Assembly (NCBI GenBank): GCA_002269645.1
Contig: NIVC01000939.1
Location: 186,001-250,000, forward strand
Direction of reading: 5' to 3'
DNA: 64,000 nucleotides
Source: Macrostomum lignano
Lineage: Eukaryota
Part shown: one piece after another, positions 16,401-49,921 of the stretch
Numbering within the stretch: the stretch's first letter is position 1
Layout: each line of letters starts with the position of its first letter
Translations under genes and position numbers: made by a program
Notes under the pieces: model-generated
Told to the model about the DNA's origin: nothing
Databases searched by the model: none
What the model saw: the letters and a program-made list of their open reading frames with translations, nothing else

Positions 16401-16825
16401 TGTCTGTGTGTGTTGTGCATGTCTGTGTGTGTTTTGCATGTCTGTGTGTGTTGTGCATGTCTGTGTGTTTGTGTGTTGTGCATGTCTGTGTGTGTTTGTG
16501 TGTTGTGCGTGTCTGTGTGTGTTTGTGTTGTGCGTGTCTGTGTGTGTGTGTGTTTTGCATGTCTGTGTGTGTTTTGCATGTCTGTGTGTGTTGTGCATGT
16601 CTGTGTGTGTTGTGCGTGTCTGTGTGTGTTGTGCATGTCTGTGTGTGTTGTGCGTGTCTGTGTGTGTTGTGCGTGTCTGTGTGTGTTGTGCATGTCTGTG
16701 TGTGTTGTGCATGTCTGTGTGTGTTTTGCATGTCTGTGTGTGTTGTGCATGTCTGTGTGTGTTTTGCATGTCTGTGTGTGTTGTGCATGTCTGTGTGTGT
16801 TGTGCGTGTCTGTGTGTGTGTGTCT
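13475..16825. repeat. (TG)-rich cryptic satellite, ~19-bp unit GTCTGTGTGTGTTGTGCAT
   Basis: 3.35 kb continuous array. Confidence 0.97.
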
Positions 16826-25190: not shown

Positions 25191-26287
25191 GTTCAGCCAT
25201 TTTCAAGGAGATTATCAAGATATGACTGCATGCTGAATGATGGTTATCGCAGGAGCACCTGTGCAGCTACCTGGCTGACAAAAACTGATAAGATCAGATG
25301 ATAATTATTGATAGAACCGCCTCCCCATTTACTTTGTTTGAAAAAACTGCTTGTATAAAAAGCAATTAACGAGCACTTGGTCTTGACAACCCGCAACTGG
25401 CTAACTGGATGGAATCAATTATAAGCTTCTTTATAAAGCTAATATGAAGCCTCAGTTGCATTTTGGCTTGCGCCATGTCTTTGATGAATTTTGCTAGAAT
25501 TTCAATTAAGTCTGGACCATCTTCATGAGTTATTCGGTAAATTTATTTATCCTCTTCAGTAAGGTTTTTAAATTCGAAACTTTATCCCGAGATTTCCTGT
25601 TCAAATTTATCACGGGAAGCAACTATAAAATTTCCAAATGCACTTAAGTGAACTTCGCTTTCTAACTTCTACATGGCACTTTTGGCAGATTTTCAAATTC
25701 CAAAGTGCGCGTCACCTCGGGACGATTTTGGCCACAGACGGTCTGAATTGAATTTCATCTGTTTCAATGGAATGAAACTTCGTTTAAATTGAATCTCCGC
25801 AAGCGCTGGGGCTTCTTTAAGTGTTTGAATTGAAGTCCTGCTTGTTTCAAACAAGAATTGTTCAAACTAGGAGGTAAAATGGAGTAATAAAGGCAGTCTG
25901 CCCAGCCCTGACTTCCAGCTAATCAACATTTTGGCTGACTTGTAGAACTGCTTCGGGTAAATCAAGCGCAGCATCGGTGGGGTGGGTGAGCGGTTGGAGA
26001 TCATGCAACCCCCGGAGCCAGCAATCATCCATCATTTTCAAGGATCCACCTTCCTAATTTTAGGAGGCAGTTTTCCGAAAAAATACACTGCGGAGATAGA
26101 AAGTTTTCATTTTTCAGCACAAAAATTGTTATTGCTTTCGATAGGAGGCAGACCCAATGTTCATATTATGCTTATATGTTTTGTTTTGCATATACATGTA
26201 TGCTTTGATATGTTCTGCCTCTCTTATAGCTCTAGTGCAATTCATAAAGCGTTTCTATACTATACTAATTTTCTTATTCTACGAGTA

Positions 26288-29200
26288 TGTGGAGTGAGCT
26301 ATCTAGGGTATACAGTATCAGTGGAGTGAGCTATCTAGGGTATACAGTATCAGTGGAGTGAGCTATCTAGGGTATACAGTATCAGTGGAGTGAGCTATTT
26401 AGGGTATACAGTATCAGTGGAGTGAGCTATTTAGGGTATACAGTATCAGTGGAGTGAGCTATTTAGGGTATACAGTATCAGTGGAGTGAGCTATTTAGGG
26501 TATACAGTATCAGTGGAGTGAGCTATTTAGGGTATACAGTATCAGTGGAGTGAGCTATTTAGGGTATACAGTATCAGTGGAGTGAGCTATTTAGGGTATA
26601 CAGTATCAGTGGAGTGAGCTATTTAGGGTATACAGTATCAGTGGAGTGAGCTATTTAGGGTATACAGTATCAGTGGAGTGAGCTATTTAGGGTATACAGT
26701 ATCAGTGGAGTGAGCTATTTAGGGTATACAGTATCAGTGGAGTGAGCTATTTAGGGTATACAGTATCAGTGGAGTGAGCTATTTAGGGTATACAGTATCA
26801 GTGGAGTGAGCTATTTAGGGTATACAGTATCAGTGGAGTGAGCTATTTAGGGTATACAGTATCAGTGGAGTGAGCTATTTAGGGTATACAGTATCAGTGG
26901 AGTGAGCTATTTAGGGTATACAGTATCAGTGGAGTGAGCTATTTAGGGTATACAGTATCAGTGGAGTGAGCTATTTAGGGTATACAGTATCAGTGGAGTG
27001 AGCTATTTAGGGTATACAGTATCAGTGGAGTGAGCTATTTAGGGTATACAGTATCAGTGGAGTGAGCTATTTAGGGTATACAGTATCAGTGGAGTGAGCT
27101 ATTTAGGGTATACAGTATCAGTGGAGTGAGCTATTTAGGGTATACAGTATCAGTGGAGTGAGCTATTTAGGGTATACAGTATCAGTGGAGTGAGCTATTT
27201 AGGGTATACAGTATCAGTGGAGTGAGCTATTTAGGGTATACAGTATCAGTGGAGTGAGCTATTTAGGGTATACAGTATCAGTGGAGTGAGCTATTTAGGG
27301 TATACAGTATCAGTGGAGTGAGCTATTTAGGGTATACAGTATCAGTGGAGTGAGCTATTTAGGGTATACAGTATCAGTGGAGTGAGCTATTTAGGGTATA
27401 CAGTATCTGTGGAGTGAGCTATTTAGGGTATACAGTATCAGTGGAGTGAGCTATTTAGGGTATACAGTATCAGTGGAGTGAGCTATTTAGGGTATACAGT
27501 ATCAGTGGAGTGAGCTATTTAGGGTATACAGTATCAGTGGAGTGAGCTATTTAGGGTATACAGTATCAGTGGAGTGAGCTATTTAGGGTATACAGTATCT
27601 GTGGAGTGAGCTATTTAGGGTATACAGTATCAGTGGAGTGAGCTATTTAGGGTATACAGTATCTGTGGAGTGAGCTATTTAGGGTATACAGTATCAGTGG
27701 AGTGAGCTATTTAGGGTATACAGTATCAGTGGAGTGAGCTATTTAGGGTATACAGTATCAGTGGAGTGAGCTATTTAGGGTATACAGTATCTGTGGAGTG
27801 AGCTATTTAGGGTATACAGTATCAGTGGAGTGAGCTATTTAGGGTATACAGTATCTGTGGAGTGAGCTATTTAGGGTATACAGTATCAGTGGAGTGAGCT
27901 ATTTAGGGTATACAGTATCAGTGGAGTGAGCTATTTAGGGTATACAGTATCTGTGGAGTGAGCTATTTAGGGTATACAGTATCAGTGGAGTGAGCTATTT
28001 AGGGTATACAGTATCAGTGGAGTGAGCTATTTAGGGTATACAGTATCAGTGGAGTGAGCTATTTAGGGTATACAGTATCTGTGGAGTGAGCTATTTAGGG
28101 TATACAGTATCAGTGGAGTGAGCTATTTAGGGTATACAGTATCAGTGGAGTGAGCTATTTAGGGTATACAGTATCAGTGGAGTGAGCTATTTAGGGTATA
28201 CAGTATCAGTGGAGTGAGCTATTTAGGGTATACAGTATCTGTGGAGTGAGCTATTTAGGGTATACAGTATCTGTGGAGTGAGCTATTTAGGGTATACAGT
28301 ATCAGTGGAGTGAGCTATTTAGGGTATACAGTATCAGTGGAGTGAGCTATTTAGGGTATACAGTATCAGTGGAGTGAGCTATTTAGGGTATACAGTATCA
28401 GTGGAGTGAGCTATTTAGGGTATACAGTATCTGTGGAGTGAGCTATTTAGGGTATACAGTATCAGTGGAGTGAGCTATTTAGGGTATACAGTATCTGTGG
28501 AGTGAGCTATTTAGGGTATACAGTATCAGTGGAGTGAGCTATTTAGGGTATACAGTATCAGTGGAGTGAGCTATTTAGGGTATACAGTATCAGTGGAGTG
28601 AGCTATTTAGGGTATACAGTATCAGTGGAGTGAGCTATTTAGGGTATACAGTATCAGTGGAGTGAGCTATTTAGGGTATACAGTATCAGTGGAGTGAGCT
28701 ATTTAGGGTATACAGTATCAGTGGAGTGAGCTATTTAGGGTATACAGTATCAGTGGAGTGAGCTATTTAGGGTATACAGTATCAGTGGAGTGAGCTATTT
28801 AGGGTATACAGTATCAGTGGAGTGAGCTATTTAGGGTATACAGTATCTGTGGAGTGAGCTATTTAGGGTATACAGTATCAGTGGAGTGAGCTATTTAGGG
28901 TATACAGTATCAGTGGAGTGAGCTATTTAGGGTATACAGTATCAGTGGAGTGAGCTATTTAGGGTATACAGTATCTGTGGAGTGAGCTATTTAGGGTATA
29001 CAGTATCAGTGGAGTGAGCTATTTAGGGTATACAGTATCAGTGGAGTGAGCTATCTAGGGTATACAGTATCAGTGGAGTGAGCTATTTAGGGTATACAGT
29101 ATCAGTGGAGTGAGTCATCTAGGGTATACAGTATCTGTGGAGTGAGTCATCTAGGGTATACAGTATCAGTGGAGTGAGTCATCTAGGGTATACAGTATCT

Positions 29201-29572
29201 GTGGAGTGAGCCATCTAGGGTATACAGTATCTGTGGAGTGAGTCATCTAGGGTATACAGTATCTGTGGAGTGAGCCATCTAGGGTATACAGTATCTGTGG
29301 AGTGAGTCATCTAGGGTATACAGTATCTGTGGAGTGAGTCATCTAGGGTATACAGTATCAGTGGAGTGAGCCATCAGTGGAGTGAGTCATCTAGGGTATA
29401 CAGTATCTGTGGAGTGAGCCATCTGGGGTATACAGTATCTGTGGAGTGAGCCATCTAGGGTATACAGTATCTGTGGAGTGAGTCATCTAGGGTATACAGT
29501 ATCTGTGGAGTGAGTCATCTAGGGTATACAGTATCAGTGGAGTGAGCCATCTAGGGTATACAGTATCAGTGG
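26288..29572. repeat. 32-bp satellite (GTGGAGTGAGCTATTTAGGGTATACAGTATCA), one TTAGGG per unit
   Basis: About 100 copies; CTAGGG variants at both edges. Confidence 0.97.
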
Positions 29573-32682: not shown

Positions 32683-33177
32683 GCTTGGCCCTAGCGGAGA
32701 CAGCGAGAGCTGCTCAAGTTGAAGAGTTTACCGGCCGTGTGGGTCAGCTCAGTTTTCAACCCTCCTCCATTTTTTAAATATCTTGCGCAGCGGAGAAATT
32801 CTCAGCATTCAAAGTAAGAAATTTAGAGGCTACTACTTGACCACAAGAACAATATGGGCCAGGAGAGGGACTTAGCGACTCGCCTGTCAGCTCGGAGCGG
32901 GCTTCGCAGTGTGAAAGACCGTTCCAGCTGAGTGCCCCGAGTGCTGCGCGTTGACCCAGGCGATCCGCGTGTGTCAACAATTAAGAGGGCGGGGGCTCCG
33001 CTCCATCCAGCGATAAAAAGGCTGCTTAAGGCAATCAAGAAAGCGCTGAGGCTTCACTGAGCTGCAGGGGCACGACTGTGGCGCCGGTCCAGACTTTTGT
33101 TTATCTTAGTGAGTTTTTTCACATCAACTCGACTGAACTTGCACGCGAGGAGCAAGAGTTTTGCTGAAGGCTAAGAA

Positions 33178-36100
33178 AGGGGATGTCAACTTAAGGCTCT
33201 GGAATGGAGCCCGAAGTTCAGCTCCGGCCCAAACCGACTGAAATCGATAACTTGTCGGCCCAGACGACTAGAATCGCCGAGACATCCCATCCGGCTCCCT
33301 TCCTTGGGGTCCCAGGGGATAAAGGGGATAAAATGGGGATCCACTGATACGGTTTGTGCCTCTCGTTAACACATTTGTCCTGCTTAATGGCAGCAAAGCA
33401 GCACATAGCGGAACATAGTGGCACAGCGGATGTCTCTGCGATTCTAGTCGTCTGGGCCGACAAGTTATCGATTGCAGTCGGTTTGGGCCGGAGCTGAACT
33501 TCGGGCTCCATTCCAGAGCCTTAAGTTGACATGAGATCCCCATTTTATCCCCTTTATCCCCTGGGACCCCAAGGAAGGGAGCCGGATGGGATGTCTCGGC
33601 GATTCTAGTCGTCTGGGCCGACAAGTTATCGATTGCAGTCGGTTTGGGCCGGAGCTGAACTTCGGGCTCTATTCCAGAGCCTTAAGTTGACATGAGATCC
33701 CCATTTTATCCCCTTTATCCCCTGGGACCCCAAGGAAGGGAGCCGGATGGGATGTCTCGGCGATTCTAGTCGTCTGGGCCGACAAGTTATCGATTGCAGT
33801 CGGTTTGGGCCGGAGCTGAACTTCGGGCTCCATTCCAGAGCCTTAAGTTGACATGAGATCCCCATTTTATCCCCTTTATCCCCTGGGACCCCAAGGAAGG
33901 GAGCCGGATGGGATGTCTCGGCGATTCTAGTCGTCTGGGCCGACAAGTTATCGATTGCAGTCGGTTTGGGCCGGAGCTGAACTTCGGGCTCTATTCCAGA
34001 GCCTTAAGTTGACATGAGATCCCCATTTTATCCCCTTTATCCCCTGGGACCCCAAGGAAGGGAGCCGGATGGGATGTCTCGGCGATTCTAGTCGTCTGGG
34101 CCGACAAGTTATCGATTGCAGTCGGTTTGGGCCGGAGCTGAACTTCGGGCTCCATTCCAGAGCCTTAAGTTGACATGAGATCCCCATTTTATCCCCTTTA
34201 TCCCCTGGGACCCCAAGGAAGGGAGCCGGATGGGATGTCTCGGCGATTCTAGTCGTCTGGGCCGACAAGTTATCGATTGCAGTCGGTTTGGGCCGGAGCT
34301 GAACTTCGGGCTCCATTCCAGAGCCTTAAGTTGACATGAGATCCCCATTTTATCCCCTTTATCCCCTGGGACCCCAAGGAAGGGAGCCGGATGGGATGTC
34401 TCGGCGATTCTAGTCGTCTGGGCCGACAAGTTATCGATTGCAGTCGGTTTGGTCCGGAGCTGAACTTCGGGCTCCATTCCAGAGCCTTAAGTTGACATGA
34501 GATCCCCATTTTATCCCCTTTATCCCCTGGGACCCCAAGGAAGGGAGCCGGATGGGATGTCTCGGCGATTCTAGTCGTCTGGGCCGACAAGTTATCGATT
34601 GCAGTCGGTTTGGGCCGGAGCTGAACTTCGGGCTCCATTCCAGAGCCTTAAGTTGACATGAGATCCCCATTTTATCCCCTTTATCCCCTGGGACCCCAAG
34701 GAAGGGAGCCGGATGGGATGTCTCGGCGATTCTAGTCGTCTGGGCCGACAAGTTATCGATTGCAGTCGGTTTGGGCCGGAGCTGAACTTCGGGCTCCATT
34801 CCAGAGCCTTAAGTTGACATGAGATCCCCATTTTATCCCCTTTATCCCCTGGGACCCCAAGGAAGGGAGCCGGATGGGATGTCTCGGCGATTCTAGTCGT
34901 CTGGGCCGACAAGTTATCGATTGCAGTCGGTTTGGGCCGGAGCTGAACTTCGGGCTCCATTCCAGAGCCTTAAGTTGACATGAGATCCCCATTTTATCCC
35001 CTTTATCCCCTGGGACCCCAAGGAAGGGAGCCGGATGGGATGTCTCGGCGATTCTAGTCGTCTGGGCCGACAAGTTATCGATTGCAGTCGGTTTGGGCCG
35101 GAGCTGAACTTCGGGCTCCATTCCAGAGCCTTAAGTTGACATGAGATCCCCATTTTATCCCCTTTATCCCCTGGGACCCCAAGGAAGGGAGCCGGATGGG
35201 ATGTCTCGGCGATTCTAGTCGTCTGGGCCGACAAGTTATCGATTGCAGTCGGTTTGGGCCGGAGCTGAACTTCGGGCTCCATTCCAGAGCCTTAAGTTGA
35301 CATGAGATCCCCATTTTATCCCCTTTATCCCCTGGGACCCCAAGGAAGGGAGCCGGATGGGATGTCTCGGCGATTCTAGTCGTCTGGGCCGACAAGTTAT
35401 CGATTGCAGTCGGTTTGGGCCGGAGCTGAACTTCGGGCTCCATTCCAGAGCCTTAAGTTGACATGAGATCCCCATTTTATCCCCTTTATCCCCTGGGACC
35501 CCAAGGAAGGGAGCCGGATGGGATGTCTCGGCGATTCTAGTCGTCTGGGCCGACAAGTTATCGATTGCAGTCGGTTTGGGCCGGAGCTGAACTTCGGGCT
35601 CCATTCCAGAGCCTTAAGTTGACATGAGATCCCCATTTTATCCCCTTTATCCCCTGGGACCCCAAGGAAGGGAGCCGGATGGGATGTCTCGGCGATTCTA
35701 GTCGTCTGGGCCGACAAGTTATCGATTGCAGTCGGTTTGGGCCGGAGCTGAACTTCGGGCTCCATTCCAGAGCCTTAAGTTGACATGAGATCCCCATTTT
35801 ATCCCCTTTATCCCCTGGGACCCCAAGGAAGGGAGCCGGATGGGATGTCTCGGCGATTCTAGTCGTCTGGGCCGACAAGTTATCGATTGCAGTCGGTTTG
35901 GGCCGGAGCTGAACTTCGGGCTCCATTCCAGAGCCTTAAGTTGACATGAGATCCCCATTTTATCCCCTTTATCCCCTGGGACCCCAAGGAAGGGAGCCGG
36001 ATGGGATGTCTCGGCGATTCTAGTCGTCTGGGCCGACAAGTTATCGATTGCAGTCGGTTTGGGCCGGAGCTGAACTTCGGGCTCCATTCCAGAGCCTTAA

Positions 36101-39100
36101 GTTGACATGAGATCCCCATTTTATCCCCTTTATCCCCTGGGACCCCAAGGAAGGGAGCCGGATGGGATGTCTCGGCGATTCTAGTCGTCTGGGCCGACAA
36201 GTTATCGATTGCAGTCGGTTTGGGCCGGAGCTGAACTTCGGGCTCCATTCCAGAGCCTTAAGTTGACATGAGATCCCCATTTTATCCCCTTTATCCCCTG
36301 GGACCCCAAGGAAGGGAGCCGGATGGGATGTCTCGGCGATTCTAGTCGTCTGGGCCGACAAGTTATCGATTGCAGTCGGTTTGGGCCGGAGCTGAACTTC
36401 GGGCTCCATTCCAGAGCCTTAAGTTGACATGAGATCCCCATTTTATCCCCTTTATCCCCTGGGACCCCAAGGAAGGGAGCCGGATGGGATGTCTCGGCGA
36501 TTCTAGTCGTCTGGGCCGACAAGTTATCGATTGCAGTCGGTTTGGGCCGGAGCTGAACTTCGGGCTCCATTCCAGAGCCTTAAGTTGACATGAGATCCCC
36601 ATTTTATCCCCTTTATCCCCTGGGACCCCAAGGAAGGGAGCCGGATGGGATGTCTCGGCGATTCTAGTCGTCTGGGCCGACAAGTTATCGATTGCAGTCG
36701 GTTTGGGCCGGAGCTGAACTTCGGGCTCCATTCCAGAGCCTTAAGTTGACATGAGATCCCCATTTTATCCCCTTTATCCCCTGGGACCCCAAGGAAGGGA
36801 GCCGGATGGGATGTCTCGGCGATTCTAGTCGTCTGGGCCGACAAGTTATCGATTGCAGTCGGTTTGGGCCGGAGCTGAACTTCGGGCTCCATTCCAGAGC
36901 CTTAAGTTGACATGAGATCCCCATTTTATCCCCTTTATCCCCTGGGACCCCAAGGAAGGGAGCCGGATGGGATGTCTCGGCGATTCTAGTCGTCTGGGCC
37001 GACAAGTTATCGATTGCAGTCGGTTTGGGCCGGAGCTGAACTTCGGGCTCCATTCCAGAGCCTTAAGTTGACATGAGATCCCCATTTTATCCCCTTTATC
37101 CCCTGGGACCCCAAGGAAGGGAGCCGGATGGGATGTCTCGGCGATTCTAGTCGTCTGGGCCGACAAGTTATCGATTGCAGTCGGTTTGGGCCGGAGCTGA
37201 ACTTCGGGCTCCATTCCAGAGCCTTAAGTTGACATGAGATCCCCATTTTATCCCCTTTATCCCCTGGGACCCCAAGGAAGGGAGCCGGATGGGATGTCTC
37301 GGCGATTCTAGTCGTCTGGGCCGACAAGTTATCGATTGCAGTCGGTTTGGGCCGGAGCTGAACTTCGGGCTCCATTCCAGAGCCTTAAGTTGACATGAGA
37401 TCCCCATTTTATCCCCTTTATCCCCTGGGACCCCAAGGAAGGGAGCCGGATGGGATGTCTCGGCGATTCTAGTCGTCTGGGCCGACAAGTTATCGATTGC
37501 AGTCGGTTTGGGCCGGAGCTGAACTTCGGGCTCCATTCCAGAGCCTTAAGTTGACATGAGATCCCCATTTTATCCCCTTTATCCCCTGGGACCCCAAGGA
37601 AGGGAGCCGGATGGGATGTCTCGGCGATTCTAGTCGTCTGGGCCGACAAGTTATCGATTGCAGTCGGTTTGGGCCGGAGCTGAACTTCGGGCTCCATTCC
37701 AGAGCCTTAAGTTGACATGAGATCCCCATTTTATCCCCTTTATCCCCTGGGACCCCAAGGAAGGGAGCCGGATGGGATGTCTCGGCGATTCTAGTCGTCT
37801 GGGCCGACAAGTTATCGATTGCAGTCGGTTTGGGCCGGAGCTGAACTTCGGGCTCCATTCCAGAGCCTTAAGTTGACATGAGATCCCCATTTTATCCCCT
37901 TTATCCCCTGGGACCCCAAGGAAGGGAGCCGGATGGGATGTCTCGGCGATTCTAGTCGTCTGGGCCGACAAGTTATCGATTGCAGTCGGTTTGGGCCGGA
38001 GCTGAACTTCGGGCTCCATTCCAGAGCCTTAAGTTGACATGAGATCCCCATTTTATCCCCTTTATCCCCTGGGACCCCAAGGAAGGGAGCCGGATGGGAT
38101 GTCTCGGCGATTCTAGTCGTCTGGGCCGACAAGTTATCGATTGCAGTCGGTTTGGGCCGGAGCTGAACTTCGGGCTCCATTCCAGAGCCTTAAGTTGACA
38201 TGAGATCCCCATTTTATCCCCTTTATCCCCTGGGACCCCAAGGAAGGGAGCCGGATGGGATGTCTCGGCGATTCTAGTCGTCTGGGCCGACAAGTTATCG
38301 ATTGCAGTCGGTTTGGGCCGGAGCTGAACTTCGGGCTCCATTCCAGAGCCTTAAGTTGACATGAGATCCCCATTTTATCCCCTTTATCCCCTGGGACCCC
38401 AAGGAAGGGAGCCGGATGGGATGTCTCGGCGATTCTAGTCGTCTGGGCCGACAAGTTATCGATTGCAGTCGGTTTGGGCCGGAGCTGAACTTCGGGCTCC
38501 ATTCCAGAGCCTTAAGTTGACATGAGATCCCCATTTTATCCCCTTTATCCCCTGGGACCCCAAGGAAGGGAGCCGGATGGGATGTCTCGGCGATTCTAGT
38601 CGTCTGGGCCGACAAGTTATCGATTGCAGTCGGTTTGGGCCGGAGCTGAACTTCGGGCTCCATTCCAGAGCCTTAAGTTGACATGAGATCCCCATTTTAT
38701 CCCCTTTATCCCCTGGGACCCCAAGGAAGGGAGCCGGATGGGATGTCTCGGCGATTCTAGTCGTCTGGGCCGACAAGTTATCGATTGCAGTCGGTTTGGG
38801 CCGGAGCTGAACTTCGGGCTCCATTCCAGAGCCTTAAGTTGACATGAGATCCCCATTTTATCCCCTTTATCCCCTGGGACCCCAAGGAAGGGAGCCGGAT
38901 GGGATGTCTCGGCGATTCTAGTCGTCTGGGCCGACAAGTTATCGATTGCAGTCGGTTTGGGCCGGAGCTGAACTTCGGGCTCCATTCCAGAGCCTTAAGT
39001 TGACATGAGATCCCCATTTTATCCCCTTTATCCCCTGGGACCCCAAGGAAGGGAGCCGGATGGGATGTCTCGGCGATTCTAGTCGTCTGGGCCGACAAGT

Positions 39101-42100
39101 TATCGATTGCAGTCGGTTTGGGCCGGAGCTGAACTTCGGGCTCCATTCCAGAGCCTTAAGTTGACATGAGATCCCCATTTTATCCCCTTTATCCCCTGGG
39201 ACCCCAAGGAAGGGAGCCGGATGGGATGTCTCGGCGATTCTAGTCGTCTGGGCCGACAAGTTATCGATTGCAGTCGGTTTGGGCCGGAGCTGAACTTCGG
39301 GCTCCATTCCAGAGCCTTAAGTTGACATGAGATCCCCATTTTATCCCCTTTATCCCCTGGGACCCCAAGGAAGGGAGCCGGATGGGATGTCTCGGCGATT
39401 CTAGTCGTCTGGGCCGACAAGTTATCGATTGCAGTCGGTTTGGGCCGGAGCTGAACTTCGGGCTCCATTCCAGAGCCTTAAGTTGACATGAGATCCCCAT
39501 TTTATCCCCTTTATCCCCTGGGACCCCAAGGAAGGGAGCCGGATGGGATGTCTCGGCGATTCTAGTCGTCTGGGCCGACAAGTTATCGATTGCAGTCGGT
39601 TTGGGCCGGAGCTGAACTTCGGGCTCCATTCCAGAGCCTTAAGTTGACATGAGATCCCCATTTTATCCCCTTTATCCCCTGGGACCCCAAGGAAGGGAGC
39701 CGGATGGGATGTCTCGGCGATTCTAGTCGTCTGGGCCGACAAGTTATCGATTGCAGTCGGTTTGGGCCGGAGCTGAACTTCGGGCTCCATTCCAGAGCCT
39801 TAAGTTGACATGAGATCCCCATTTTATCCCCTTTATCCCCTGGGACCCCAAGGAAGGGAGCCGGATGGGATGTCTCGGCGATTCTAGTCGTCTGGGCCGA
39901 CAAGTTATCGATTGCAGTCGGTTTGGGCCGGAGCTGAACTTCGGGCTCCATTCCAGAGCCTTAAGTTGACATGAGATCCCCATTTTATCCCCTTTATCCC
40001 CTGGGACCCCAAGGAAGGGAGCCGGATGGGATGTCTCGGCGATTCTAGTCGTCTGGGCCGACAAGTTATCGATTGCAGTCGGTTTGGGCCGGAGCTGAAC
40101 TTCGGGCTCCATTCCAGAGCCTTAAGTTGACATGAGATCCCCATTTTATCCCCTTTATCCCCTGGGACCCCAAGGAAGGGAGCCGGATGGGATGTCTCGG
40201 CGATTCTAGTCGTCTGGGCCGACAAGTTATCGATTGCAGTCGGTTTGGGCCGGAGCTGAACTTCGGGCTCCATTCCAGAGCCTTAAGTTGACATGAGATC
40301 CCCATTTTATCCCCTTTATCCCCTGGGACCCCAAGGAAGGGAGCCGGATGGGATGTCTCGGCGATTCTAGTCGTCTGGGCCGACAAGTTATCGATTGCAG
40401 TCGGTTTGGGCCGGAGCTGAACTTCGGGCTCCATTCCAGAGCCTTAAGTTGACATGAGATCCCCATTTTATCCCCTTTATCCCCTGGGACCCCAAGGAAG
40501 GGAGCCGGATGGGATGTCTCGGCGATTCTAGTCGTCTGGGCCGACAAGTTATCGATTGCAGTCGGTTTGGGCCGGAGCTGAACTTCGGGCTCCATTCCAG
40601 AGCCTTAAGTTGACATGAGATCCCCATTTTATCCCCTTTATCCCCTGGGACCCCAAGGAAGGGAGCCGGATGGGATGTCTCGGCGATTCTAGTCGTCTGG
40701 GCCGACAAGTTATCGATTGCAGTCGGTTTGGGCCGGAGCTGAACTTCGGGCTCCATTCCAGAGCCTTAAGTTGACATGAGATCCCCATTTTATCCCCTTT
40801 ATCCCCTGGGACCCCAAGGAAGGGAGCCGGATGGGATGTCTCGGCGATTCTAGTCGTCTGGGCCGACAAGTTATCGATTGCAGTCGGTTTGGGCCGGAGC
40901 TGAACTTCGGGCTCCATTCCAGAGCCTTAAGTTGACATGAGATCCCCATTTTATCCCCTTTATCCCCTGGGACCCCAAGGAAGGGAGCCGGATGGGATGT
41001 CTCGGCGATTCTAGTCGTCTGGGCCGACAAGTTATCGATTGCAGTCGGTTTGGGCCGGAGCTGAACTTCGGGCTCCATTCCAGAGCCTTAAGTTGACATG
41101 AGATCCCCATTTTATCCCCTTTATCCCCTGGGACCCCAAGGAAGGGAGCCGGATGGGATGTCTCGGCGATTCTAGTCGTCTGGGCCGACAAGTTATCGAT
41201 TGCAGTCGGTTTGGGCCGGAGCTGAACTTCGGGCTCCATTCCAGAGCCTTAAGTTGACATGAGATCCCCATTTTATCCCCTTTATCCCCTGGGACCCCAA
41301 GGAAGGGAGCCGGATGGGATGTCTCGGCGATTCTAGTCGTCTGGGCCGACAAGTTATCGATTGCAGTCGGTTTGGGCCGGAGCTGAACTTCGGGCTCCAT
41401 TCCAGAGCCTTAAGTTGACATGAGATCCCCATTTTATCCCCTTTATCCCCTGGGACCCCAAGGAAGGGAGCCGGATGGGATGTCTCGGCGATTCTAGTCG
41501 TCTGGGCCGACAAGTTATCGATTGCAGTCGGTTTGGGCCGGAGCTGAACTTCGGGCTCCATTCCAGAGCCTTAAGTTGACATGAGATCCCCATTTTATCC
41601 CCTTTATCCCCTGGGACCCCAAGGAAGGGAGCCGGATGGGATGTCTCGGCGATTCTAGTCGTCTGGGCCGACAAGTTATCGATTGCAGTCGGTTTGGGCC
41701 GGAGCTGAACTTCGGGCTCCATTCCAGAGCCTTAAGTTGACATGAGATCCCCATTTTATCCCCTTTATCCCCTGGGACCCCAAGGAAGGGAGCCGGATGG
41801 GATGTCTCGGCGATTCTAGTCGTCTGGGCCGACAAGTTATCGATTGCAGTCGGTTTGGCCGGAGCTGAACTTCGGGCTCCATTCCAGAGCCTTAAGTTGA
41901 CATGAGATCCCCATTTTATCCCCTTTATCCCCTGGGACCCCAAGGAAGGGAGCCGGATGGGATGTCTCGGCGATTCTAGTCGTCTGGGCCGACAAGTTAT
42001 CGATTGCAGTCGGTTTGGGCCGGAGCTGAACTTCGGGCTCCATTCCAGAGCCTTAAGTTGACATGAGATCCCCATTTTATCCCCTTTATCCCCTGGGACC

Positions 42101-45100
42101 CCAAGGAAGGGAGCCGGATGGGATGTCTCGGCGATTCTAGTCGTCTGGGCCGACAAGTTATCGATTGCAGTCGGTTTGGGCCGGAGCTGAACTTCGGGCT
42201 CCATTCCAGAGCCTTAAGTTGACATGAGATCCCCATTTTATCCCCTTTATCCCCTGGGACCCCAAGGAAGGGAGCCGGATGGGATGTCTCGGCGATTCTA
42301 GTCGTCTGGGCCGACAAGTTATCGATTGCAGTCGGTTTGGGCCGGAGCTGAACTTCGGGCTCCATTCCAGAGCCTTAAGTTGACATGAGATCCCCATTTT
42401 ATCCCCTTTATCCCCTGGGACCCCAAGGAAGGGAGCCGGATGGGATGTCTCGGCGATTCTAGTCGTCTGGGCCGACAAGTTATCGATTGCAGTCGGTTTG
42501 GGCCGGAGCTGAACTTCGGGCTCCATTCCAGAGCCTTAAGTTGACATGAGATCCCCATTTTATCCCCTTTATCCCCTGGGACCCCAAGGAAGGGAGCCGG
42601 ATGGGATGTCTCGGCGATTCTAGTCGTCTGGGCCGACAAGTTATCGATTGCAGTCGGTTTGGGCCGGAGCTGAACTTCGGGCTCCATTCCAGAGCCTTAA
42701 GTTGACATGAGATCCCCATTTTATCCCCTTTATCCCCTGGGACCCCAAGGAAGGGAGCCGGATGGGATGTCTCGGCGATTCTAGTCGTCTGGGCCGACAA
42801 GTTATCGATTGCAGTCGGTTTGGGCCGGAGCTGAACTTCGGGCTCCATTCCAGAGCCTTAAGTTGACATGAGATCCCCATTTTATCCCCTTTATCCCCTG
42901 GGACCCCAAGGAAGGGAGCCGGATGGGATGTCTCGGCGATTCTAGTCGTCTGGGCCGACAAGTTATCGATTGCAGTCGGTTTGGGCCGGAGCTGAACTTC
43001 GGGCTCCATTCCAGAGCCTTAAGTTGACATGAGATCCCCATTTTATCCCCTTTATCCCCTGGGACCCCAAGGAAGGGAGCCGGATGGGATGTCTCGGCGA
43101 TTCTAGTCGTCTGGGCCGACAAGTTATCGATTGCAGTCGGTTTGGGCCGGAGCTGAACTTCGGGCTCCATTCCAGAGCCTTAAGTTGACATGAGATCCCC
43201 ATTTTATCCCCTTTATCCCCTGGGACCCCAAGGAAGGGAGCCGGATGGGATGTCTCGGCGATTCTAGTCGTCTGGGCCGACAAGTTATCGATTGCAGTCG
43301 GTTTGGGCCGGAGCTGAACTTCGGGCTCCATTCCAGAGCCTTAAGTTGACATGAGATCCCCATTTTATCCCCTTTATCCCCTGGGACCCCAAGGAAGGGA
43401 GCCGGATGGGATGTCTCGGCGATTCTAGTCGTCTGGGCCGACAAGTTATCGATTGCAGTCGGTTTGGGCCGGAGCTGAACTTCGGGCTCCATTCCAGAGC
43501 CTTAAGTTGACATGAGATCCCCATTTTATCCCCTTTATCCCCTGGGACCCCAAGGAAGGGAGCCGGATGGGATGTCTCGGCGATTCTAGTCGTCTGGGCC
43601 GACAAGTTATCGATTGCAGTCGGTTTGGGCCGGAGCTGAACTTCGGGCTCCATTCCAGAGCCTTAAGTTGACATGAGATCCCCATTTTATCCCCTTTATC
43701 CCCTGGGACCCCAAGGAAGGGAGCCGGATGGGATGTCTCGGCGATTCTAGTCGTCTGGGCCGACAAGTTATCGATTGCAGTCGGTTTGGTCCGGAGCTGA
43801 ACTTCGGGCTCCATTCCAGAGCCTTAAGTTGACATGAGATCCCCATTTTATCCCCTTTATCCCCTGGGACCCCAAGGAAGGGAGCCGGATGGGATGTCTC
43901 GGCGATTCTAGTCGTCTGGGCCGACAAGTTATCGATTGCAGTCGGTTTGGGCCGGAGCTGAACTTCGGGCTCCATTCCAGAGCCTTAAGTTGACATGAGA
44001 TCCCCATTTTATCCCCTTTATCCCCTGGGACCCCAAGGAAGGGAGCCGGATGGGATGTCTCGGCGATTCTAGTCGTCTGGGCCGACAAGTTATCGATTGC
44101 AGTCGGTTTGGGCCGGAGCTGAACTTCGGGCTCCATTCCAGAGCCTTAAGTTGACATGAGATCCCCATTTTATCCCCTTTATCCCCTGGGACCCCAAGGA
44201 AGGGAGCCGGATGGGATGTCTCGGCGATTCTAGTCGTCTGGGCCGACAAGTTATCGATTGCAGTCGGTTTGGTCCGGAGCTGAACTTCGGGCTCCATTCC
44301 AGAGCCTTAAGTTGACATGAGATCCCCATTTTATCCCCTTTATCCCCTGGGACCCCAAGGAAGGGAGCCGGATGGGATGTCTCGGCGATTCTAGTCGTCT
44401 GGGCCGACAAGTTATCGATTGCAGTCGGTTTGGGCCGGAGCTGAACTTCGGGCTCCATTCCAGAGCCTTAAGTTGACATGAGATCCCCATTTTATCCCCT
44501 TTATCCCCTGGGACCCCAAGGAAGGGAGCCGGATGGGATGTCTCGGCGATTCTAGTCGTCTGGGCCGACAAGTTATCGATTGCAGTCGGTTTGGGCCGGA
44601 GCTGAACTTCGGGCTCCATTCCAGAGCCTTAAGTTGACATGAGATCCCCATTTTATCCCCTTTATCCCCTGGGACCCCAAGGAAGGGAGCCGGATGGGAT
44701 GTCTCGGCGATTCTAGTCGTCTGGGCCGACAAGTTATCGATTGCAGTCGGTTTGGGCCGGAGCTGAACTTCGGGCTCCATTCCAGAGCCTTAAGTTGACA
44801 TGAGATCCCCATTTTATCCCCTTTATCCCCTGGGACCCCAAGGAAGGGAGCCGGATGGGATGTCTCGGCGATTCTAGTCGTCTGGGCCGACAAGTTATCG
44901 ATTGCAGTCGGTTTGGGCCGGAGCTGAACTTCGGGCTCCATTCCAGAGCCTTAAGTTGACATGAGATCCCCATTTTATCCCCTTTATCCCCTGGGACCCC
45001 AAGGAAGGGAGCCGGATGGGATGTCTCGGCGATTCTAGTCGTCTGGGCCGACAAGTTATCGATTGCAGTCGGTTTGGGCCGGAGCTGAACTTCGGGCTCC

Positions 45101-45772
45101 ATTCCAGAGCCTTAAGTTGACATGAGATCCCCATTTTATCCCCTTTATCCCCTGGGACCCCAAGGAAGGGAGCCGGATGGGATGTCTCGGCGATTCTAGT
45201 CGTCTGGGCCGACAAGTTATCGATTGCAGTCGGTTTGGGCCGGAGCTGAACTTCGGGCTCCATTCCAGAGCCTTAAGTTGACATGAGATCCCCATTTTAT
45301 CCCCTTTATCCCCTGGGACCCCAAGGAAGGGAGCCGGATGGGATGTCTCGGCGATTCTAGTCGTCTGGGCCGACAAGTTATCGATTGCAGTCGGTTTGGG
45401 CCGGAGCTGAACTTCGGGCTCCATTCCAGAGCCTTAAGTTGACATGAGATCCCCATTTTATCCCCTTTATCCCCTGGGACCCCAAGGAAGGGAGCCGGAT
45501 GGGATGTCTCGGCGATTCTAGTCGTCTGGGCCGACAAGTTATCGATTGCAGTCGGTTTGGGCCGGAGCTGAACTTCGGGCTCCATTCCAGAGCCTTAAGT
45601 TGACATGAGATCCCCATTTTATCCCCTTTATCCCCTGGGACCCCAAGGAAGGGAGCCGGATGGGATGTCTCGGCGATTCTAGTCGTCTGGGCCGACAAGT
45701 TATCGATTGCAGTCGGTTTGGGCCGGAGCTGAACTCCGGGCTCCATTCCAGAGCCTTAAGTTGACGTCCCCT
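33178..45772. mobile_element. Foldback/MITE-like element whose right arm is expanded into a satellite
   Basis: The left terminus AGGGGATGTCAACTTAAGGCTCTGG and right terminus CCAGAGCCTTAAGTTGACGTCCCCT are inverted repeats; the left arm 33178-33341 is an inverted monomer; unique spacer 33342-33427. No clear target-site duplication. Confidence 0.75.
33428..45765. repeat. 161-bp satellite array, ~76 copies
   Basis: 161-bp period throughout (also visible as 161-bp-spaced identical ORFs); only a handful of variants seen. Confidence 0.99.
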
Positions 45773-47582
45773 TAGGGTGTCTTATAATCAAAGCTCAAAG
45801 TCTGTGCCCGAATGTTTAACTCGACTCAACTTCTCATGCATGACACCTAACGTAAATGCCTAGATGTACCTTTGCTGCTTGAGCATATGGATAAAGACTG
45901 TAGATAGCAAAGCCGCGATGAGGCAAGCGACCATTCCGCTGACCCCTGAGCGGATGCGTACTACGCGAGTACGCGCTTACACATGGTGTACATGCAGCAG
46001 CCTTGACTTTCTCGTTGCAGGAATGCTTTTGCTTGGCCCTTCTACGTCTTGTTAAGAATCGCCCAAGCCTTAGGCAAAATTTTGTGAACGAGCGCCCAGG
46101 TAATGTGGGCCTCGCAAGAATTCAAACCCGCTGGTGACTTTGGCCTTGGGGGGGGGGGTCGGACTCTGGCCTGCTCAGCCCCACAAGCTGCTTGAAAAAA
46201 GAATTGGTATTCTTGAAAATTACTTAGTAATCGCACCGAGGATCCCAGTGAAAGTAATGTTTGAAAGCAAACTACTTTAACGCATAACGTTTAATACAAA
46301 TTAAGCATAATTTTATTATCAGTACGTATAGGATAGGGGCCGCGGGTGATGTAAATATATGACCCTGATTTGGAAACTGACATATGTGGGTTACGCAGCC
46401 AATTGGCGATCTTATGCAGCAGCCAGCGATCAGTTCCGCTGTTCAAAAAAATATCGAAAAATTCTGCGGCCTAAGCTTAAGATCAGGTTTAATCTGTATT
46501 AGACAACTGTTGTGACCGATAGGATGCACTAATTGTGCAGGAAAGCCAATTAACGTATGTTTTTCGCAGATGGCTACATCATAGCCGGGCAAAAGCTTTC
46601 TATTTGAAAATGAGGCGAGGCTGGTATTACAGCAAGTGGACGTCGGCAACGCGGGAATTTAGGACATAGAATACGAGCTTCAATAGAACGCATAGGAACG
46701 CTTGGGCTTGAACACATACTAAATTACAACATCAGCTGCTGAAATCATTCTTTGTAGACCCATATGAATAAAATAATGGGTTGCAAGGAAAGCTTTCAAA
46801 CATATCATCTGTGAGTTCAATGACCTAAGTTCATGTCAGGGTATAAGCTAGAAGTAGGAGATGCCGAATCAAAAGACTGTGTAGTATCGGCAATAATAAT
46901 AATCTGCGAGTTTTTCAATTCGTAGCAAGATAACTAACCAACTGCATGCATTTTCTAGCGCTTTTTGAAGAAAATATTTTTGGAGAAGTTTTGCTTGTGA
47001 GAAGAAGGTAACCTTATGGTGACTTATGATTATGAAGAAAAATCCGGTTGTTTTAAGCGGGCATTTTAATTTCGAAACCAATTATAGCCAAATTGTATTT
47101 TTAAAAGTGAATGTAAAAAGTTTAAACAAAAAGAAATCAATAAAGAAACGAATCGACTTATACATTGAAACTATATAAGTTTATATGTGATGAGTATACA
47201 TTTTAAAAAGTAAATCTAGACTTTTAATCAGCTCGATTTGTAGATTTTAGCATTTTGTACTTCTTTCAAAAGAATAATTTTATGTCATCCTGGGACCGAT
47301 CCCTCCGTGGGAATTTCTGGTGGGAACTGTCAGATTTTTCTGTTACGATCGTATTCAATATATTATATTCAATAAAAATTCATCATTATATTACCAGTGA
47401 ATACATTTTCAAAATTCAGGTTGTTTTTCTTTTTTTTCGAATTGTGACTATAAAGTCTGTACAGAATAGTACAAGTAATGCACATAATTGTGCCTTTTAT
47501 TTTAGGAGCTAGGAGGCGTATAAACGCGGGAAACTTGACATTACCGCGCCGCTTAGTGTGTTAGCCAGTGCCCAGTGGCTCA

Positions 47583-47930
47583 GGGGGGCCGTAGCCCAGC
47601 GGTCTAGCGCAGGCTCTGGTGTGCCAGCGACCAAGGCTCGATTCCAAGTGCAGTCACATTAATTTGGGGCTGAATTGGAATCTCGGCTTGGCTCTGCTCA
47701 TGCAATTAACGGCCTTGAGAGCCAACCCCCAAGGCACAGTGAAGTGTACATGCCTAATGATAAAATAAAGTTAGGGCCGCTGTACACTCCTGTGTGAGTG
47801 TGTGCCTGTGTACATATCTGCGCGCTTATAGCCTATACTAGCTATAGGCCTATGCCTGCTCAGGCCTCAGGGGAGTCAGTGGAGTGGGCAGTAATGCCTC
47901 TCGCCGGTTGTATGTTGATGTCGCTTAAAG
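47583..47930 (+). mobile_element. tRNA-derived SINE-like element, copy 2
   Basis: GGGGGGCCGTAGCCCAGCGGTCTAGCG...GGCTCGATTCCAAGTGCAGTC; colinear with 10082-10353 apart from two insertions. Confidence 0.7.
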
Positions 47931-49921
47931 TGTGCCAGGGTGCACACAACCCCCCTGCCTCTAATAATAAATAGCCAGTAGCTTAGATAGGAGTCCGTGA
48001 GCCTGGGCAAATTGGGGTAAGGCCTAGGCCTATTACAATTTCATGTAGCCCCCCCCCCCCTATTCAAATTTGAACAAGTCAAGATTTCATACTTGTGCAA
48101 TTAAAATAAAAAGCAATCAATAATGTGGCAGTGAAATTGTTTTCAATAATTATATCTAGGCCTATTCTAGGTTCAGGCATGCCATGCGAGGGGTGGGGCA
48201 ATGGTAGAGGGCCTAGGCCCTAACACCAGGGCAAAATCTGATTTTTTGGATAGAGAAGCCAAATGGCAAAACAAAAAATATAGACATAGACCAAATGATC
48301 TGATATAATTTCATTGAAATTTTGGGAAGGCAATGCTTGCAGCTCTCTAAACAATTAAATTATTAGGCAGGCAATTACCTAACTGGCCATCTTGCCCTCA
48401 TGATTTCTGGCTCTTTTGCATCTGCCTAGGTTATTAAACCTATAGTAGGGATTAGTTAGCCTTTTAAAGCCAAATTAATAGCCTAGCCAAATTTTTCAAG
48501 GGCTCACAGGCTAATAACATAAGTGAAAAACCTTATTTGCATGATGTCACTGATGTCAGTCTAAACCAATAGTTTTTTGTTTGTTTCATTTGTTTCTGTT
48601 TTTTCTGGGCTTTAAACACAATGGGAATAAGAAATATAAAAGAAAAACAAAAGATAAAAAGGTAAAATGAAAGGCACATGACCAAAATGGCCAGATACCA
48701 AGATAGCCACAGCTCTATATCTAAATAGATAATAAGCCTAGTTCTATATATTTCATTCATTTCCTATTGGTAGTAATTAGGGAAATAGATGCTATAAGAT
48801 ATTATATTGGAATTGTTGGCTATCCTGCAGAATTGTTTGTTAAATTCACTGTATGTATATTTTTTAACTATTGATATGAAACTTTCCAAAAATGAATGTT
48901 TTCATTATGCCAACATTTTAGAAATGTTTAGAAGTGTCCATATTTGTTAGTTCAAAGGCTGGACCTAGATGAACCTCTTGAGGTGGCATAATCTATGTTA
49001 GGGTAGAAGGTTGTTCACTAGCCATTTTTAAGTGAAAAGCACTTTATTTGCAGTATTTGTAGCTTAGCAGCGCCCCTCTCCTTAAAGCCCCAGAGTTCAT
49101 AACTAATTTTGGTCATAGACATAATTTTTGCCAGTGACATCAGTGCATAAATTCAAAATTGCATAGGCCTAATTGTTAATAGTTGTTGAATTTTGGAAAA
49201 ATCTAGAAAAAACCAAGAAATTGCCAAGAAACCAAGAATTTAAATTACAACCCTCACAAATAGAATTTTAATACTGAAACACTTCTAAAATGTTAGCATA
49301 ATGAAAGTATTCATTTTTGGCAAGTTTCATGTCAATAGATAAAAAATGTACATACAGTGAATTTAACAGACCATTCTGCAGGATAGCCAAATTGTTAATG
49401 TATTTTATTATAATCATTCCCTTTGGCTTTAGCTTTTATTGTAGCCTGACCTATACTATATATAGATATTTATTCATTACATAAAGCAAGTAGCCTAGCA
49501 CAAAATAAATACACTTTTGCATATTTATCCCAATTTTTACATAGAATTACAAGTAGCAATGGTATTATTCAGTAAATAACAAAAATCAAATATAAGGATT
49601 GCTGTATTAGGCATTTAAAAAGAAGGATGAAAACGGTTGATAATAATTATAGATAAGAAAGGTATTCTACTTTGCTTAACTTCTTGAAGCTTTTATAGTA
49701 TAAAATATTGACTTTAATGACTTGCATATACTAAATGGGGCCAAATTGGTAAAAGTAATTAAAGAAAAAGTGCAATTCACTTGATATATAGAAATTATGA
49801 TAGTGTAGGGCAAGCTGATACCTTATCAGAGTGATTTTGATGCTTACAGACATTTGTAAATTATAGTATGAGTAACCCTGCTCTATCCCACAGCTCACAG
49901 CTGCTCAGCTCACAGCTACTC

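What the first reader, a model, noticed from the sequence alone, without database searches (positions are those of the whole stretch)
33178..45772. A 12-kb satellite apparently born inside a foldback/MITE: one arm amplified ~76-fold while the opposite arm survives as a single inverted monomer
Seen: the whole block is bounded by inverted termini (AGGGGATGTCAACTTAAGG... / ...CCTTAAGTTGACGTCCCCT). The left ~164 bp is the exact reverse complement of the satellite monomer, followed by an 87-bp unique spacer, a partial unit at 33428, ~76 tandem 161-bp units and the intact right terminus. Known: satellites can derive from MITEs/Helitrons, and 150-180 bp monomers match nucleosome spacing. Inference: an ancestral element of roughly 360 bp (arm-spacer-arm) had one arm amplified in place, so parent element and offspring satellite are both preserved. 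The terminal arm can also fold back on any unit (palindrome/hairpin potential).
Basis: partly seen in the sequence, partly recalled or inferred. Interest (0 to 1): 0.8.

Follow-up and report, generated by a model that had tools for sequence, protein, structure and literature searches.

The report
Young satellite grown from an inverted repeat
A 12.3-kb run of 76 almost identical 161-bp repeats sits next to a single flipped copy of the same unit, which shows that one arm of a small inverted-repeat element was multiplied on the spot; this is a clear example of a route to satellite DNA that has already been described.

Summary
A 161-bp array runs from 33428 to 45773: 76 full periods plus a last piece of 111 nt, 99.9% identical to its consensus. 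It is preceded by an 86-bp unique spacer (33342-33427) and one inverted unit (33177-33341). The block ends in inverted termini AAGGGGAYGTCAACTTAAGG.

The inverted copy covers 159 of the 161 nt of a unit, with 158/159 identical. It runs exactly from one unit joint to the next. Only the 2-nt "GA" of the joint GTTGACAT-GA-GATCCCC is missing from it. This match in phase argues that the single copy is parent-like and that the array grew from an arm. It argues against the copy being a stray fragment of an older array.

The array is young. It has sharp borders and no decayed units elsewhere in the window, and seven of its eight variant units lie near its edges.

The "MITE/foldback transposon" label is not established. 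There is no target-site duplication of 2-11 bp, although a real MITE 3 kb away has one. No other copy exists in the window. No searchable collection or paper holds the sequence.

The host is an unidentified animal. Amplification of transposon inverted-repeat units into satellites is already described (Tetris/TIR-220, Xstir, miDNA4), so this is a new member of a known kind.

The parts
33177..33341 (-). Left arm: a single inverted copy of the repeat unit. It consists of 6 outer terminal bases (AAGGGG) plus 159 nt that match a unit from joint to joint.
   Evidence: 33183-33341 is 159 nt and 99% complementary to array units; the reverse complement differs from the consensus at one base (GATTTCAG against GATTGCAG); the outer end of the inverted repeat is at 33177.
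33342..33427 (.). Unique 86-nt spacer, which forms the loop of the potential hairpin.
   Evidence: single occurrence in the window; no similarity to the unit or the flanks beyond shuffled controls (score 17 against 15.4 +/- 2.2); no weak matches elsewhere in the window.
33428..33532 (+). Truncated first array unit (105 nt, GGATGTCTC...GTTGACAT). It lacks the inner 54 nt that the left copy and all later units have.
   Evidence: pair I4: arms 33183-33287 and 33428-33532, 105 nt, 98%, 140 nt apart..
33533..33534 (+). First instance of the 2-nt 'GA' at the unit joint (GTTGACAT-GA-GATCCCC). These are the only bases of the 161-nt unit that are absent from the left copy. The joint recurs every 161 nt.
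   Evidence: Read directly and from the consensus. pair I2 shows that homology with the left copy restarts at 33535.
33428..45773 (+). 161-bp tandem array: 76 full periods plus a terminal piece of 111 nt. The central units 8-64 are identical apart from one 1-nt deletion.
   Evidence: TRF score 24620. (register and variants); seven of the eight variant units lie within the outer 13 units at either end, P = 0.0017.
45754..45773 (-). Right terminus ...CCTTAAGTTGACGTCCCCTT, the inverted counterpart of 33177-33196. It differs by one base (G against A, at a CpG).

Best explanation
This is a young, locally born satellite-like array. It was made by head-to-tail amplification of one arm of a short inverted-repeat element of foldback or MITE type, roughly 0.36-0.42 kb long. 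That element was most likely a relic of a non-autonomous DNA transposon.

Shown:
- The structure is arm, spacer, array.
- The single left copy is exactly one unit from joint to joint.
- The two outer termini are the same sequence.

Inferred:
1. The first head-to-tail joint was made by a non-homologous event at the boundaries of the hairpin-forming arm. This could have been a template switch, or end joining of an excised or circularised arm. It left the joint GTTGACAT-GA-GATCCCC with 2 untemplated or slipped bases.
2. If the ancestor had 111-nt arms (362 bp in all), then copying the 159-nt left segment onto the inner side of the right arm gives spacer, 105-nt partial unit, GA, full unit, terminus. 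That is the arrangement now seen at the spacer border. Alternatively the arms were 165 nt each, and a later deletion removed the inner 54 nt of the first unit.
3. Once 1.65 direct copies existed, unequal sister-chromatid exchange, replication slippage, or rolling-circle copying followed by reintegration expanded and homogenised the array. This left the few variants at its edges.

No coding or RNA function is indicated. The main consequence is structural: a 12-kb array that any unit of which can pair with the inverted arm.

The confidence of 0.4 is for the full statement, including a transposon-derived parent. In-place amplification of an arm, whatever the parent was, I put at about 0.7.
For: - Array and inverted copy.
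- The left copy covers unit positions from directly after the joint 'GA' to directly before it, 159 of 161 nt. The expected chance of such phase agreement for a random fragment is about 5/161.
- The outer 6 nt AAGGGG occur only at the two termini, and the inverted repeat stops there.
- The spacer is unrelated to the unit.
- There are no decayed units elsewhere in the window, so the borders are sharp and the array is young.
- Seven of the eight variant units lie near the edges, P = 0.0017. This is the pattern expected from homogenisation by unequal exchange.
- A strong hairpin is predicted: -243.7 kcal/mol, z = -32.
- There is no Rfam, tRNA or Pfam signal in the unit. A period of 161 is not a multiple of 3, and the ORFs in the array are only 122 aa.
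- The genome carries MITEs: 48816-49390 has 114-nt inverted repeats and a target-site duplication.
- The process has precedent: Tetris/TIR-220 arrays of up to 66 copies inside a foldback element (PMC4079207), and Xstir and miDNA4 (review PMC12628747).
Against: - There is no target-site duplication of 2-11 bp at any symmetric boundary, although the arms are 99% alike and a neighbouring MITE keeps its duplication.
- There is no second copy of terminus, spacer or unit in 64 kb, and none in public collections or papers. Mobility is therefore unproven.
- The inner borders are asymmetric, so either an asymmetric ancestor or an extra deletion is needed.
- The near-perfect identity of the units could be partly a product of assembly polishing.
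Confidence: 0.4

Rival explanations
1. The in-place amplification happened as described, but the parent inverted repeat was never mobile. It arose as a local inverted duplication through a fold-back template switch during replication or repair. That event copied about 111-165 nt of unique DNA in reverse orientation 86-140 nt away, and one copy then amplified.
For: There is no target-site duplication at all. The sequence is unique in the window and in every searchable resource. The joints carry short untemplated bases, as is typical of template switching or end joining. The region is exceptionally prone to local duplication, with 50% of the window in tandem arrays.
Against: The size and shape match MITE or foldback elements: long arms, a short loop, and both ends identical up to the last base. 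Absence of a duplication can also result from recombination between two copies, from families that make none, or from one mutation in a 2-bp duplication (the right flank reads TA, the left AA). No microhomology is visible at the outer ends.
Confidence: 0.3
2. The satellite array came first, and the left copy is a secondary inverted duplication of the array's last unit together with its terminus.
For: The left copy carries the same outer bases as the right end of the array. It is as close to the consensus as the array's own edge units.
Against: The inner end of the left copy falls within 2 nt of the unit joint, which has about a 3% chance for a random breakpoint. The joint base is A, as in the left terminus, not G as in the right terminus. 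No older units are found anywhere in the window. The copy would have had to land exactly 12 kb away at the other border of the array.
Confidence: 0.08
3. This is a classical foldback element whose two arms both carried tandem arrays, as in Drosophila FB or Tetris. The left array later collapsed to a single unit.
For: Foldback elements have arms built of tandem repeats whose copy number varies between arms and between alleles (PMC4079207).
Against: The inner borders are not mirror images: the left arm ends with the inner 54 nt, while the right side starts with the outer 105 nt. A collapse to exactly one joint-to-joint unit with no joint sequence retained is unlikely. There is no 8-10 bp duplication.
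Confidence: 0.05
4. This is an assembly artefact: a chimeric join of reads in opposite orientation at the array border, and/or a copy number and unit identity produced by collapse and consensus polishing.
For: Units 8-64 are identical apart from one 1-nt deletion in a G run. Three further variants hit the same G run, which is a pattern long-read errors can give. The window offers no way to check read support.
Against: The inverted copy is separated from the array by 86 nt of unique sequence. It also carries private substitutions (T for G in the unit, A for G in the terminus). A chimeric fold-back read would instead give a perfect palindrome without a spacer. Both outer junctions with unique flanks are clean.
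Confidence: 0.07

Closest known systems
Tetris foldback transposon and its TIR-220 satellite, Drosophila virilis (PMC4079207)
   Same: Both are non-coding inverted-repeat elements in which repeats of about 160-220 bp that belong to the inverted arms were amplified in place. The resulting arrays are kb-sized and homogeneous, up to 66 copies there and 76 here. In both cases the element remains recognisable around the array.
   Different: Tetris has three-domain arms of up to 1.7 kb, with an outer unique domain of up to 866 bp. It carries tandem repeats in both arms, has 8-10 bp target-site duplications, and has many genomic copies. Here the whole arm is the repeat unit, only 6 outer bases are not part of it, only one arm is repeated, no duplication exists, and copy number in the genome is unknown.
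Xstir MITE / tandem-array composites and the miDNA4 Tc1/mariner MITE with internal satellite, Xenopus (as summarised in PMC12628747)
   Same: These are MITE-sized parents that exist as a single element, as a composite of element plus array, and as arrays. The mechanisms proposed for them involve stem-loops and short microhomologies during replication or repair.
   Different: In those cases the repeated unit comes from internal sequence or from a captured repeat, and family membership rests on many dispersed copies. Here the unit is the terminal arm itself, and only one locus can be examined.
Helentron/HINE ('pearl') elements carrying satellite-like arrays in oysters (PMC7492417)
   Same: Monomers are of about 160-170 bp inside a non-autonomous element. 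There is no target-site duplication. The present element lies between T and T when read on the minus strand, which fits the TT insertion preference.
   Different: HINEs have unique left and right flanking segments with 11-12 bp subterminal inverted repeats, a microsatellite and a 3' palindrome. Their arrays are central and short: up to about 5 units on average, 29 at most. None of those parts is present here.
Tandem arrays of truncated Helitrons made by rolling-circle replication in plants (Xiong et al. 2016, as summarised in PMC12628747)
   Same: Many copies of one end of an element are followed by a single copy of the true terminus.
   Different: There are no Helitron termini (5' TC, 3' CTRR with hairpin) here. 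The locus has an inverted arm, which Helitrons lack.

Membership tests
MITE / non-autonomous TIR DNA transposon | Terminal inverted repeats at both ends | tested here: met
   AAGGGGAYGTCAACTTAAGG is present at 33177 and, inverted, at 45773. The arms match over 111 nt (terminus to terminus) or 165 nt (left copy against a full unit).
MITE / non-autonomous TIR DNA transposon | Target-site duplication flanking the termini | tested here: not met
   No direct repeat of 2-11 bp is found at any symmetric boundary from -3 to +8 nt. The control MITE at 48816-49390 gives ATTG/AATTGT in the same test.
MITE / non-autonomous TIR DNA transposon | Multiple dispersed copies in the genome | not testable with these tools
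   The source genome is not available. There is no second copy in the 64-kb window. Metagenome and prokaryote collections give nothing or chance 21-23-nt matches.
MITE / non-autonomous TIR DNA transposon | Small size and no coding capacity | tested here: inconclusive
   No domain or RNA family is detected. The reconstructed unexpanded form of 362-416 bp is an inference, not an observed copy.
Foldback elements (Drosophila FB, Tetris) | Long inverted arms composed of tandem subrepeats in both arms | tested here: not met
   The right side holds 76.6 units and the left side exactly one unit, with no joint sequence in it.
Foldback elements (Drosophila FB, Tetris) | Target-site duplication of 8-10 bp (Tetris, PMC4079207) | tested here: not met
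Foldback elements (Drosophila FB, Tetris) | A middle domain between the arms, and the ability of a single strand to fold back | tested here: met
   The spacer is 86 nt. The predicted DNA hairpin has -243.7 kcal/mol, z = -32.
Helentron-derived HINE elements | Subterminal inverted repeats of 11-12 bp, a 3' palindrome, a microsatellite, and unique flanking segments around a central array (PMC7492417) | tested here: not met
   The array runs to within 8 nt of the right end. No unique right segment, microsatellite or terminal palindrome is present.
Helentron-derived HINE elements | Insertion at TT without a target-site duplication | tested here: inconclusive
   No duplication is present. On the minus strand the flanks read ...CCCT | element | TCTT..., which is compatible, but it is a chance event of about 1 in 16 and the end bases are ambiguous.
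Satellite DNA in the classical sense | Head-to-tail monomers of about 150-180 bp in a long homogeneous array | tested here: met
   161 bp, 76.6 copies, 99.9% identity to the consensus.
Satellite DNA in the classical sense | High genomic abundance, with a heterochromatic or centromeric location | not testable with these tools
   Only one locus of 12.3 kb is visible, lying between an ASC/ENaC-type gene and a PCM1-like exon.

The most novel reading that the evidence does not exclude
The locus may be a frozen record of a specific, structure-guided way of starting a satellite. In a hairpin-forming element of 362 bp, the 159-nt left segment, bounded by the base of the stem and a point in the loop, would have been copied once onto the inner side of the opposite 111-nt arm. 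The copying would have been by an inter-strand template switch or by way of a small circle. That single event creates 1.65 direct copies, and unequal exchange then expands them. On this reading, parent, first joint (GA filler), partial first unit and product are all still present. Inverted repeats would then be general seeds of satellites whether or not they are transposons. This genome, with half of the window in tandem arrays, might use the route often.
Probability: 0.2. Interest if true: 0.55.

Novelty: new member of a known kind. Interest (0 to 1): 0.3.

Why it matters
Most links between satellites and transposons are inferred from consensus sequences of old, scattered copies. Here the presumed parent unit, the novel head-to-tail joint, the truncated first unit and a very young array lie together at one locus. 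If population or sister-species alleles exist, the order of events can be read directly: a 1.65-copy intermediate would point to the asymmetric-ancestor route, and a full first unit to the deletion route.

The locus is also a 12-kb array facing an inverted copy. It is therefore a potential hairpin or cruciform, a fragile site, or a source of double-stranded RNA, and it lies between two genes.

Conceptually it adds an example to a known process rather than a new process.

Tried and rejected
- **Other copies through protein tools.** I looked for other copies through predicted proteins. An exact look-up of the 122-aa array ORF found nothing. A homology search with a 118-aa ORF spanning unit, spacer and arm also found nothing.
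- **Public DNA scans.** The terminus 23-mer gave 0 hits in metagenomes. A 20-mer from the unit gave 4 metagenome hits that extend only 21-23 nt, so they are chance matches, and 0 hits in prokaryote genomes.
- **Full-text searches.** Searches of papers for six unit strings and six terminus strings returned nothing relevant; the terminus hits were unrelated sequences such as PCR primers.
- **Host identification and an independent assembly.** I tried both through the PCM1-like exon. The best public identity is 78-80% over 58 aa (Lampetra planeri, Saccoglossus and unnamed contigs). The exact ORF is not on record. No upstream PCM1 exons are detectable in the window.
- **RNA or SINE origin of the unit.** No Rfam hit appears even at E <= 1, and no tRNA is found.
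- **Spacer as a decayed unit or a copy of the flanks.** Rejected; scores are at the level of shuffled controls.
- **Extension of the inverted repeat into the flanks.** Rejected.
- **Transposase or other transposon protein nearby.** None is found in ORFs of the flanks.
- **Resemblance of the terminus to hAT-type termini (CAGGGGTGTC...).** This is recalled from memory only and I could not test it. The 8-bp duplication expected for hAT is absent.
- **Shared GGGGAT/ATCCCC motifs with two neighbouring minisatellites.** I judged these not significant.
Full report
**1. What is there**

Tandem Repeats Finder reports a single array at 33428-45765 with period 161, 76.6 copies, 99% matches and no indels. 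I anchored on the motif GGATGTCTC and found 77 occurrences, spaced 161 nt apart 75 times and 160 nt once. The consensus unit is GGATGTCTC...GTTGACAT (105 nt), then GA, then GATCCCC...GGAGCCGGATG (54 nt).

Only eight units differ from the consensus, each by one change:
- unit 1: G10T
- units 2 and 4: C82T
- units 7, 65 and 68: G60T
- unit 53: a 1-nt deletion in the G run at positions 58-60
- unit 77: T74C

That is about 99.9% identity over 12.3 kb. Seven of the eight variant units lie within the outer 13 units at either end (hypergeometric P = 0.0017).

Immediately to the left lie an 86-nt spacer (33342-33427) and one inverted copy. Positions 33183-33341 are 159 nt long and 99% complementary to units at 33535-33693 and 33696-33854. 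The first array unit pairs with the inverted copy over only 105 nt (33428-33532), with 140 nt between the arms.

The block ends with AAGGGGATGTCAACTTAAGG at 33177 and the complement of AAGGGGACGTCAACTTAAGG at 45773. These are the only two matches in the window at up to 3 mismatches. A local alignment of the flanks shows that the inverted repeat stops exactly there.

The copy is 158/159 identical rather than exact. The spacer is 86 nt. The block spans 33177-45773.

**2. Anatomy that bears on origin**

The left copy, read as its reverse complement, runs from GATCCCC, the first base after the joint dinucleotide GA, to GTTGACAT, the last base before it. It is thus one unit from joint to joint, and only the GA is missing.

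Beyond GTTGACAT the left copy continues CCCCTT, as does the right terminus (GTTGACGTCCCCTT). Inside the array the continuation is GAGATCCCC. The two outer ends are therefore the same sequence, and the internal joint is a new junction.

If the left copy were a random inverted excerpt of an existing array, its inner end would fall within 2 nt of a joint only about 5 times in 161. This favours the direction arm to array.

It disfavours two rivals. One is an inverted duplication of the array's end. The other is a foldback element whose left array collapsed. The second is disfavoured further because the inner borders are not mirror images: the left arm ends with the inner 54 nt next to the spacer, while the right side begins with the outer 105 nt.

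Other relevant facts:
- The spacer is unrelated to the unit and to the flanks (best local score 17, against 15.4 +/- 2.2 for shuffles).
- Sensitive searches (blastn with word size 7, and nhmmer) find no decayed unit anywhere else in the window. The array therefore has sharp borders and no halo of old copies.
- The outer 105 nt of the unit keep CpG at the expected frequency (observed/expected 1.05).

**3. Two reconstructions of the parent**

(A) Symmetric arms of 165 nt with a spacer of at least 86 nt, at least 416 bp in all. The right arm was duplicated head to tail. A later deletion removed the inner 54 nt of the first unit and perhaps part of the spacer.

The 159-nt left segment was copied once, in inverted orientation, onto the inner side of the right arm. 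This could have been an inter-strand template switch, or a circularised copy that recombined with the right arm. The outcome is spacer, 105-nt unit, GA, full unit, terminus, which is the present border structure with no further event needed.

In either case the joint carries 2 bases not found in the parent, a signature of end joining or template switching rather than of homologous exchange. Expansion from two copies to 76 by unequal exchange, slippage or rolling-circle copying is inferred from the homogenised centre and the variable edges.

These steps are inference. Only the structure is shown.

**4. Is the parent a transposon?**

For:
- The shape fits: long arms, a short loop, and identical ends.
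- A single strand can form a strong hairpin (-243.7 kcal/mol, z = -32).
- The genome does hold MITEs. The element at 48816-49390 has 114-nt inverted repeats at 91% and a clear target-site duplication, ATTG or AATTGT depending on where the end is placed.

Against:
- The same scan finds no duplication of 2-11 bp at any symmetric boundary of the 161-bp block.
- No other copy of terminus, spacer or unit exists in the window.
- No transposase-like ORF lies nearby.

Every route to other copies failed:
- exact and homology protein look-ups of ORFs across the unit and spacer
- pattern scans of metagenome and prokaryote collections, which gave none or 21-23-nt chance matches
- full-text searches for the sequences

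Mobility is therefore untested. I put about 0.4 on a transposon-derived parent and 0.3 on a non-mobile local inverted duplication. In-place amplification of an arm is common to both.

**5. Context**

Half of the window is tandem repeat: 28 arrays, or 31% of the bases without the 161-bp array.

The host is an animal:
- The ORF at 54341-56041 (70% G+C) matches the PCM1 C-terminal family at E = 3e-29.
- Exons of an ASC/DEG/ENaC channel lie on the minus strand at 21310-21921 and 22710-23090.

The best public identity for the PCM1 domain is only 78-80% (Lampetra planeri, Saccoglossus and unnamed contigs). CpG is not depleted in the non-repetitive DNA (observed/expected 0.86). The species is thus not represented in the collections and is probably not a heavily methylated vertebrate. 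The array lies between the two genes. No PCM1 exons are detectable upstream of 54341, so I cannot say whether it is intronic.

**6. Comparison with what is known**

The closest case is Tetris of Drosophila virilis. It is a non-coding foldback element whose inverted arms contain 220-bp repeats that were amplified inside the element into arrays of up to 66 copies (PMC4079207). It differs in having a large unique outer domain, repeats in both arms, 8-10 bp duplications and many copies.

Xstir and miDNA4 of Xenopus are MITEs that exist as a single element, as a composite of element plus array, and as arrays. The mechanisms proposed for them involve stem-loops and microhomology (review PMC12628747).

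Oyster HINE/Helentron elements carry 160-170-bp arrays and make no duplication. They also have unique flanking segments, 11-12-bp subterminal repeats, a microsatellite and a 3' palindrome (PMC7492417), none of which is present here.

The present locus works like these systems, but it fails or cannot be given the defining tests for membership in any of them.

**7. Verdict**

This is a real, clean and young example of a satellite-like array grown from one arm of a small inverted repeat, with the parent-like copy preserved. The process is already described, so it is a new member of a known kind. Interest is modest. It would rise if intermediate alleles or dispersed unexpanded copies were found in the source genome.

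An assembly artefact cannot be excluded without reads. It is made unlikely by the unique spacer and by the private substitutions of the inverted copy.

Noticed in passing
window 1-64000: About 50% of the window is tandem repeat: 28 arrays, mostly minisatellites with units of 12-57 bp, or 31% of the bases without the 161-bp array. The largest others are 13473-16819 (19 bp x 178, extreme G/T strand skew) and 26289-29572 (32 bp x about 100).
   Followed up: partly
window 48816-49390: A MITE-like element of 575 bp with 114-nt terminal inverted repeats (91%) and a target-site duplication (ATTG, or AATTGT if the ends are placed one base further in). It is unrelated in sequence to the 161-bp element. 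I used it as an internal control for the duplication test.
   Followed up: yes
window 8930-10009 and 63356-63993: The same 28-bp minisatellite family (GCCAGCCTCCCAGATCCTCAGTTGCTGG) occurs twice in direct orientation 53 kb apart, at about 84% identity. This suggests a dispersed, possibly element-borne, minisatellite.
   Followed up: no
window 20324-20593 and 25992-26272: Two inverted copies of a dispersed repeat of about 270 bp, roughly 84% alike and with a 36-nt indel. The right copy ends just before the 32-bp array that starts at 26289.
   Followed up: partly
window 54341-56041 (+): An uninterrupted 566-codon ORF with 70% G+C matches the PCM1 C-terminal family (E = 3e-29) and is rich in Ala, Gly, Glu, Asp and Pro runs. 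The best public identity is only 78-80% over the 58-aa conserved core, so the species or paralogue is not in the collections.
   Followed up: partly
window 21310-21921 and 22710-23090 (-): Two exons of an amiloride-sensitive sodium channel (ASC/DEG/ENaC) gene on the minus strand, covering Pfam PF00858 profile positions 355-439 and 244-336.
   Followed up: no
window, non-tandem 32 kb: The CpG observed/expected ratio is 0.86, and 0.91 in the AT-rich right flank. The genome is therefore not CpG-depleted in the way typical vertebrate DNA is.
   Followed up: no
window 34453, 41857-41859, 43790, 44273 (unit positions 58-60): Four of the eight variant units are altered in the same GGG run: three G-to-T changes and one 1-nt deletion. 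This could be recurrent mutation, block duplication within the array, or homopolymer error from long reads.
   Followed up: no
window 163-277 / 3160-3277; 10080-10178 / 47583-47682; 18071-18121 / 20483-20533: Three further pairs of short dispersed direct repeats, 85-98% identical. They are probably fragments of interspersed elements.
   Followed up: no
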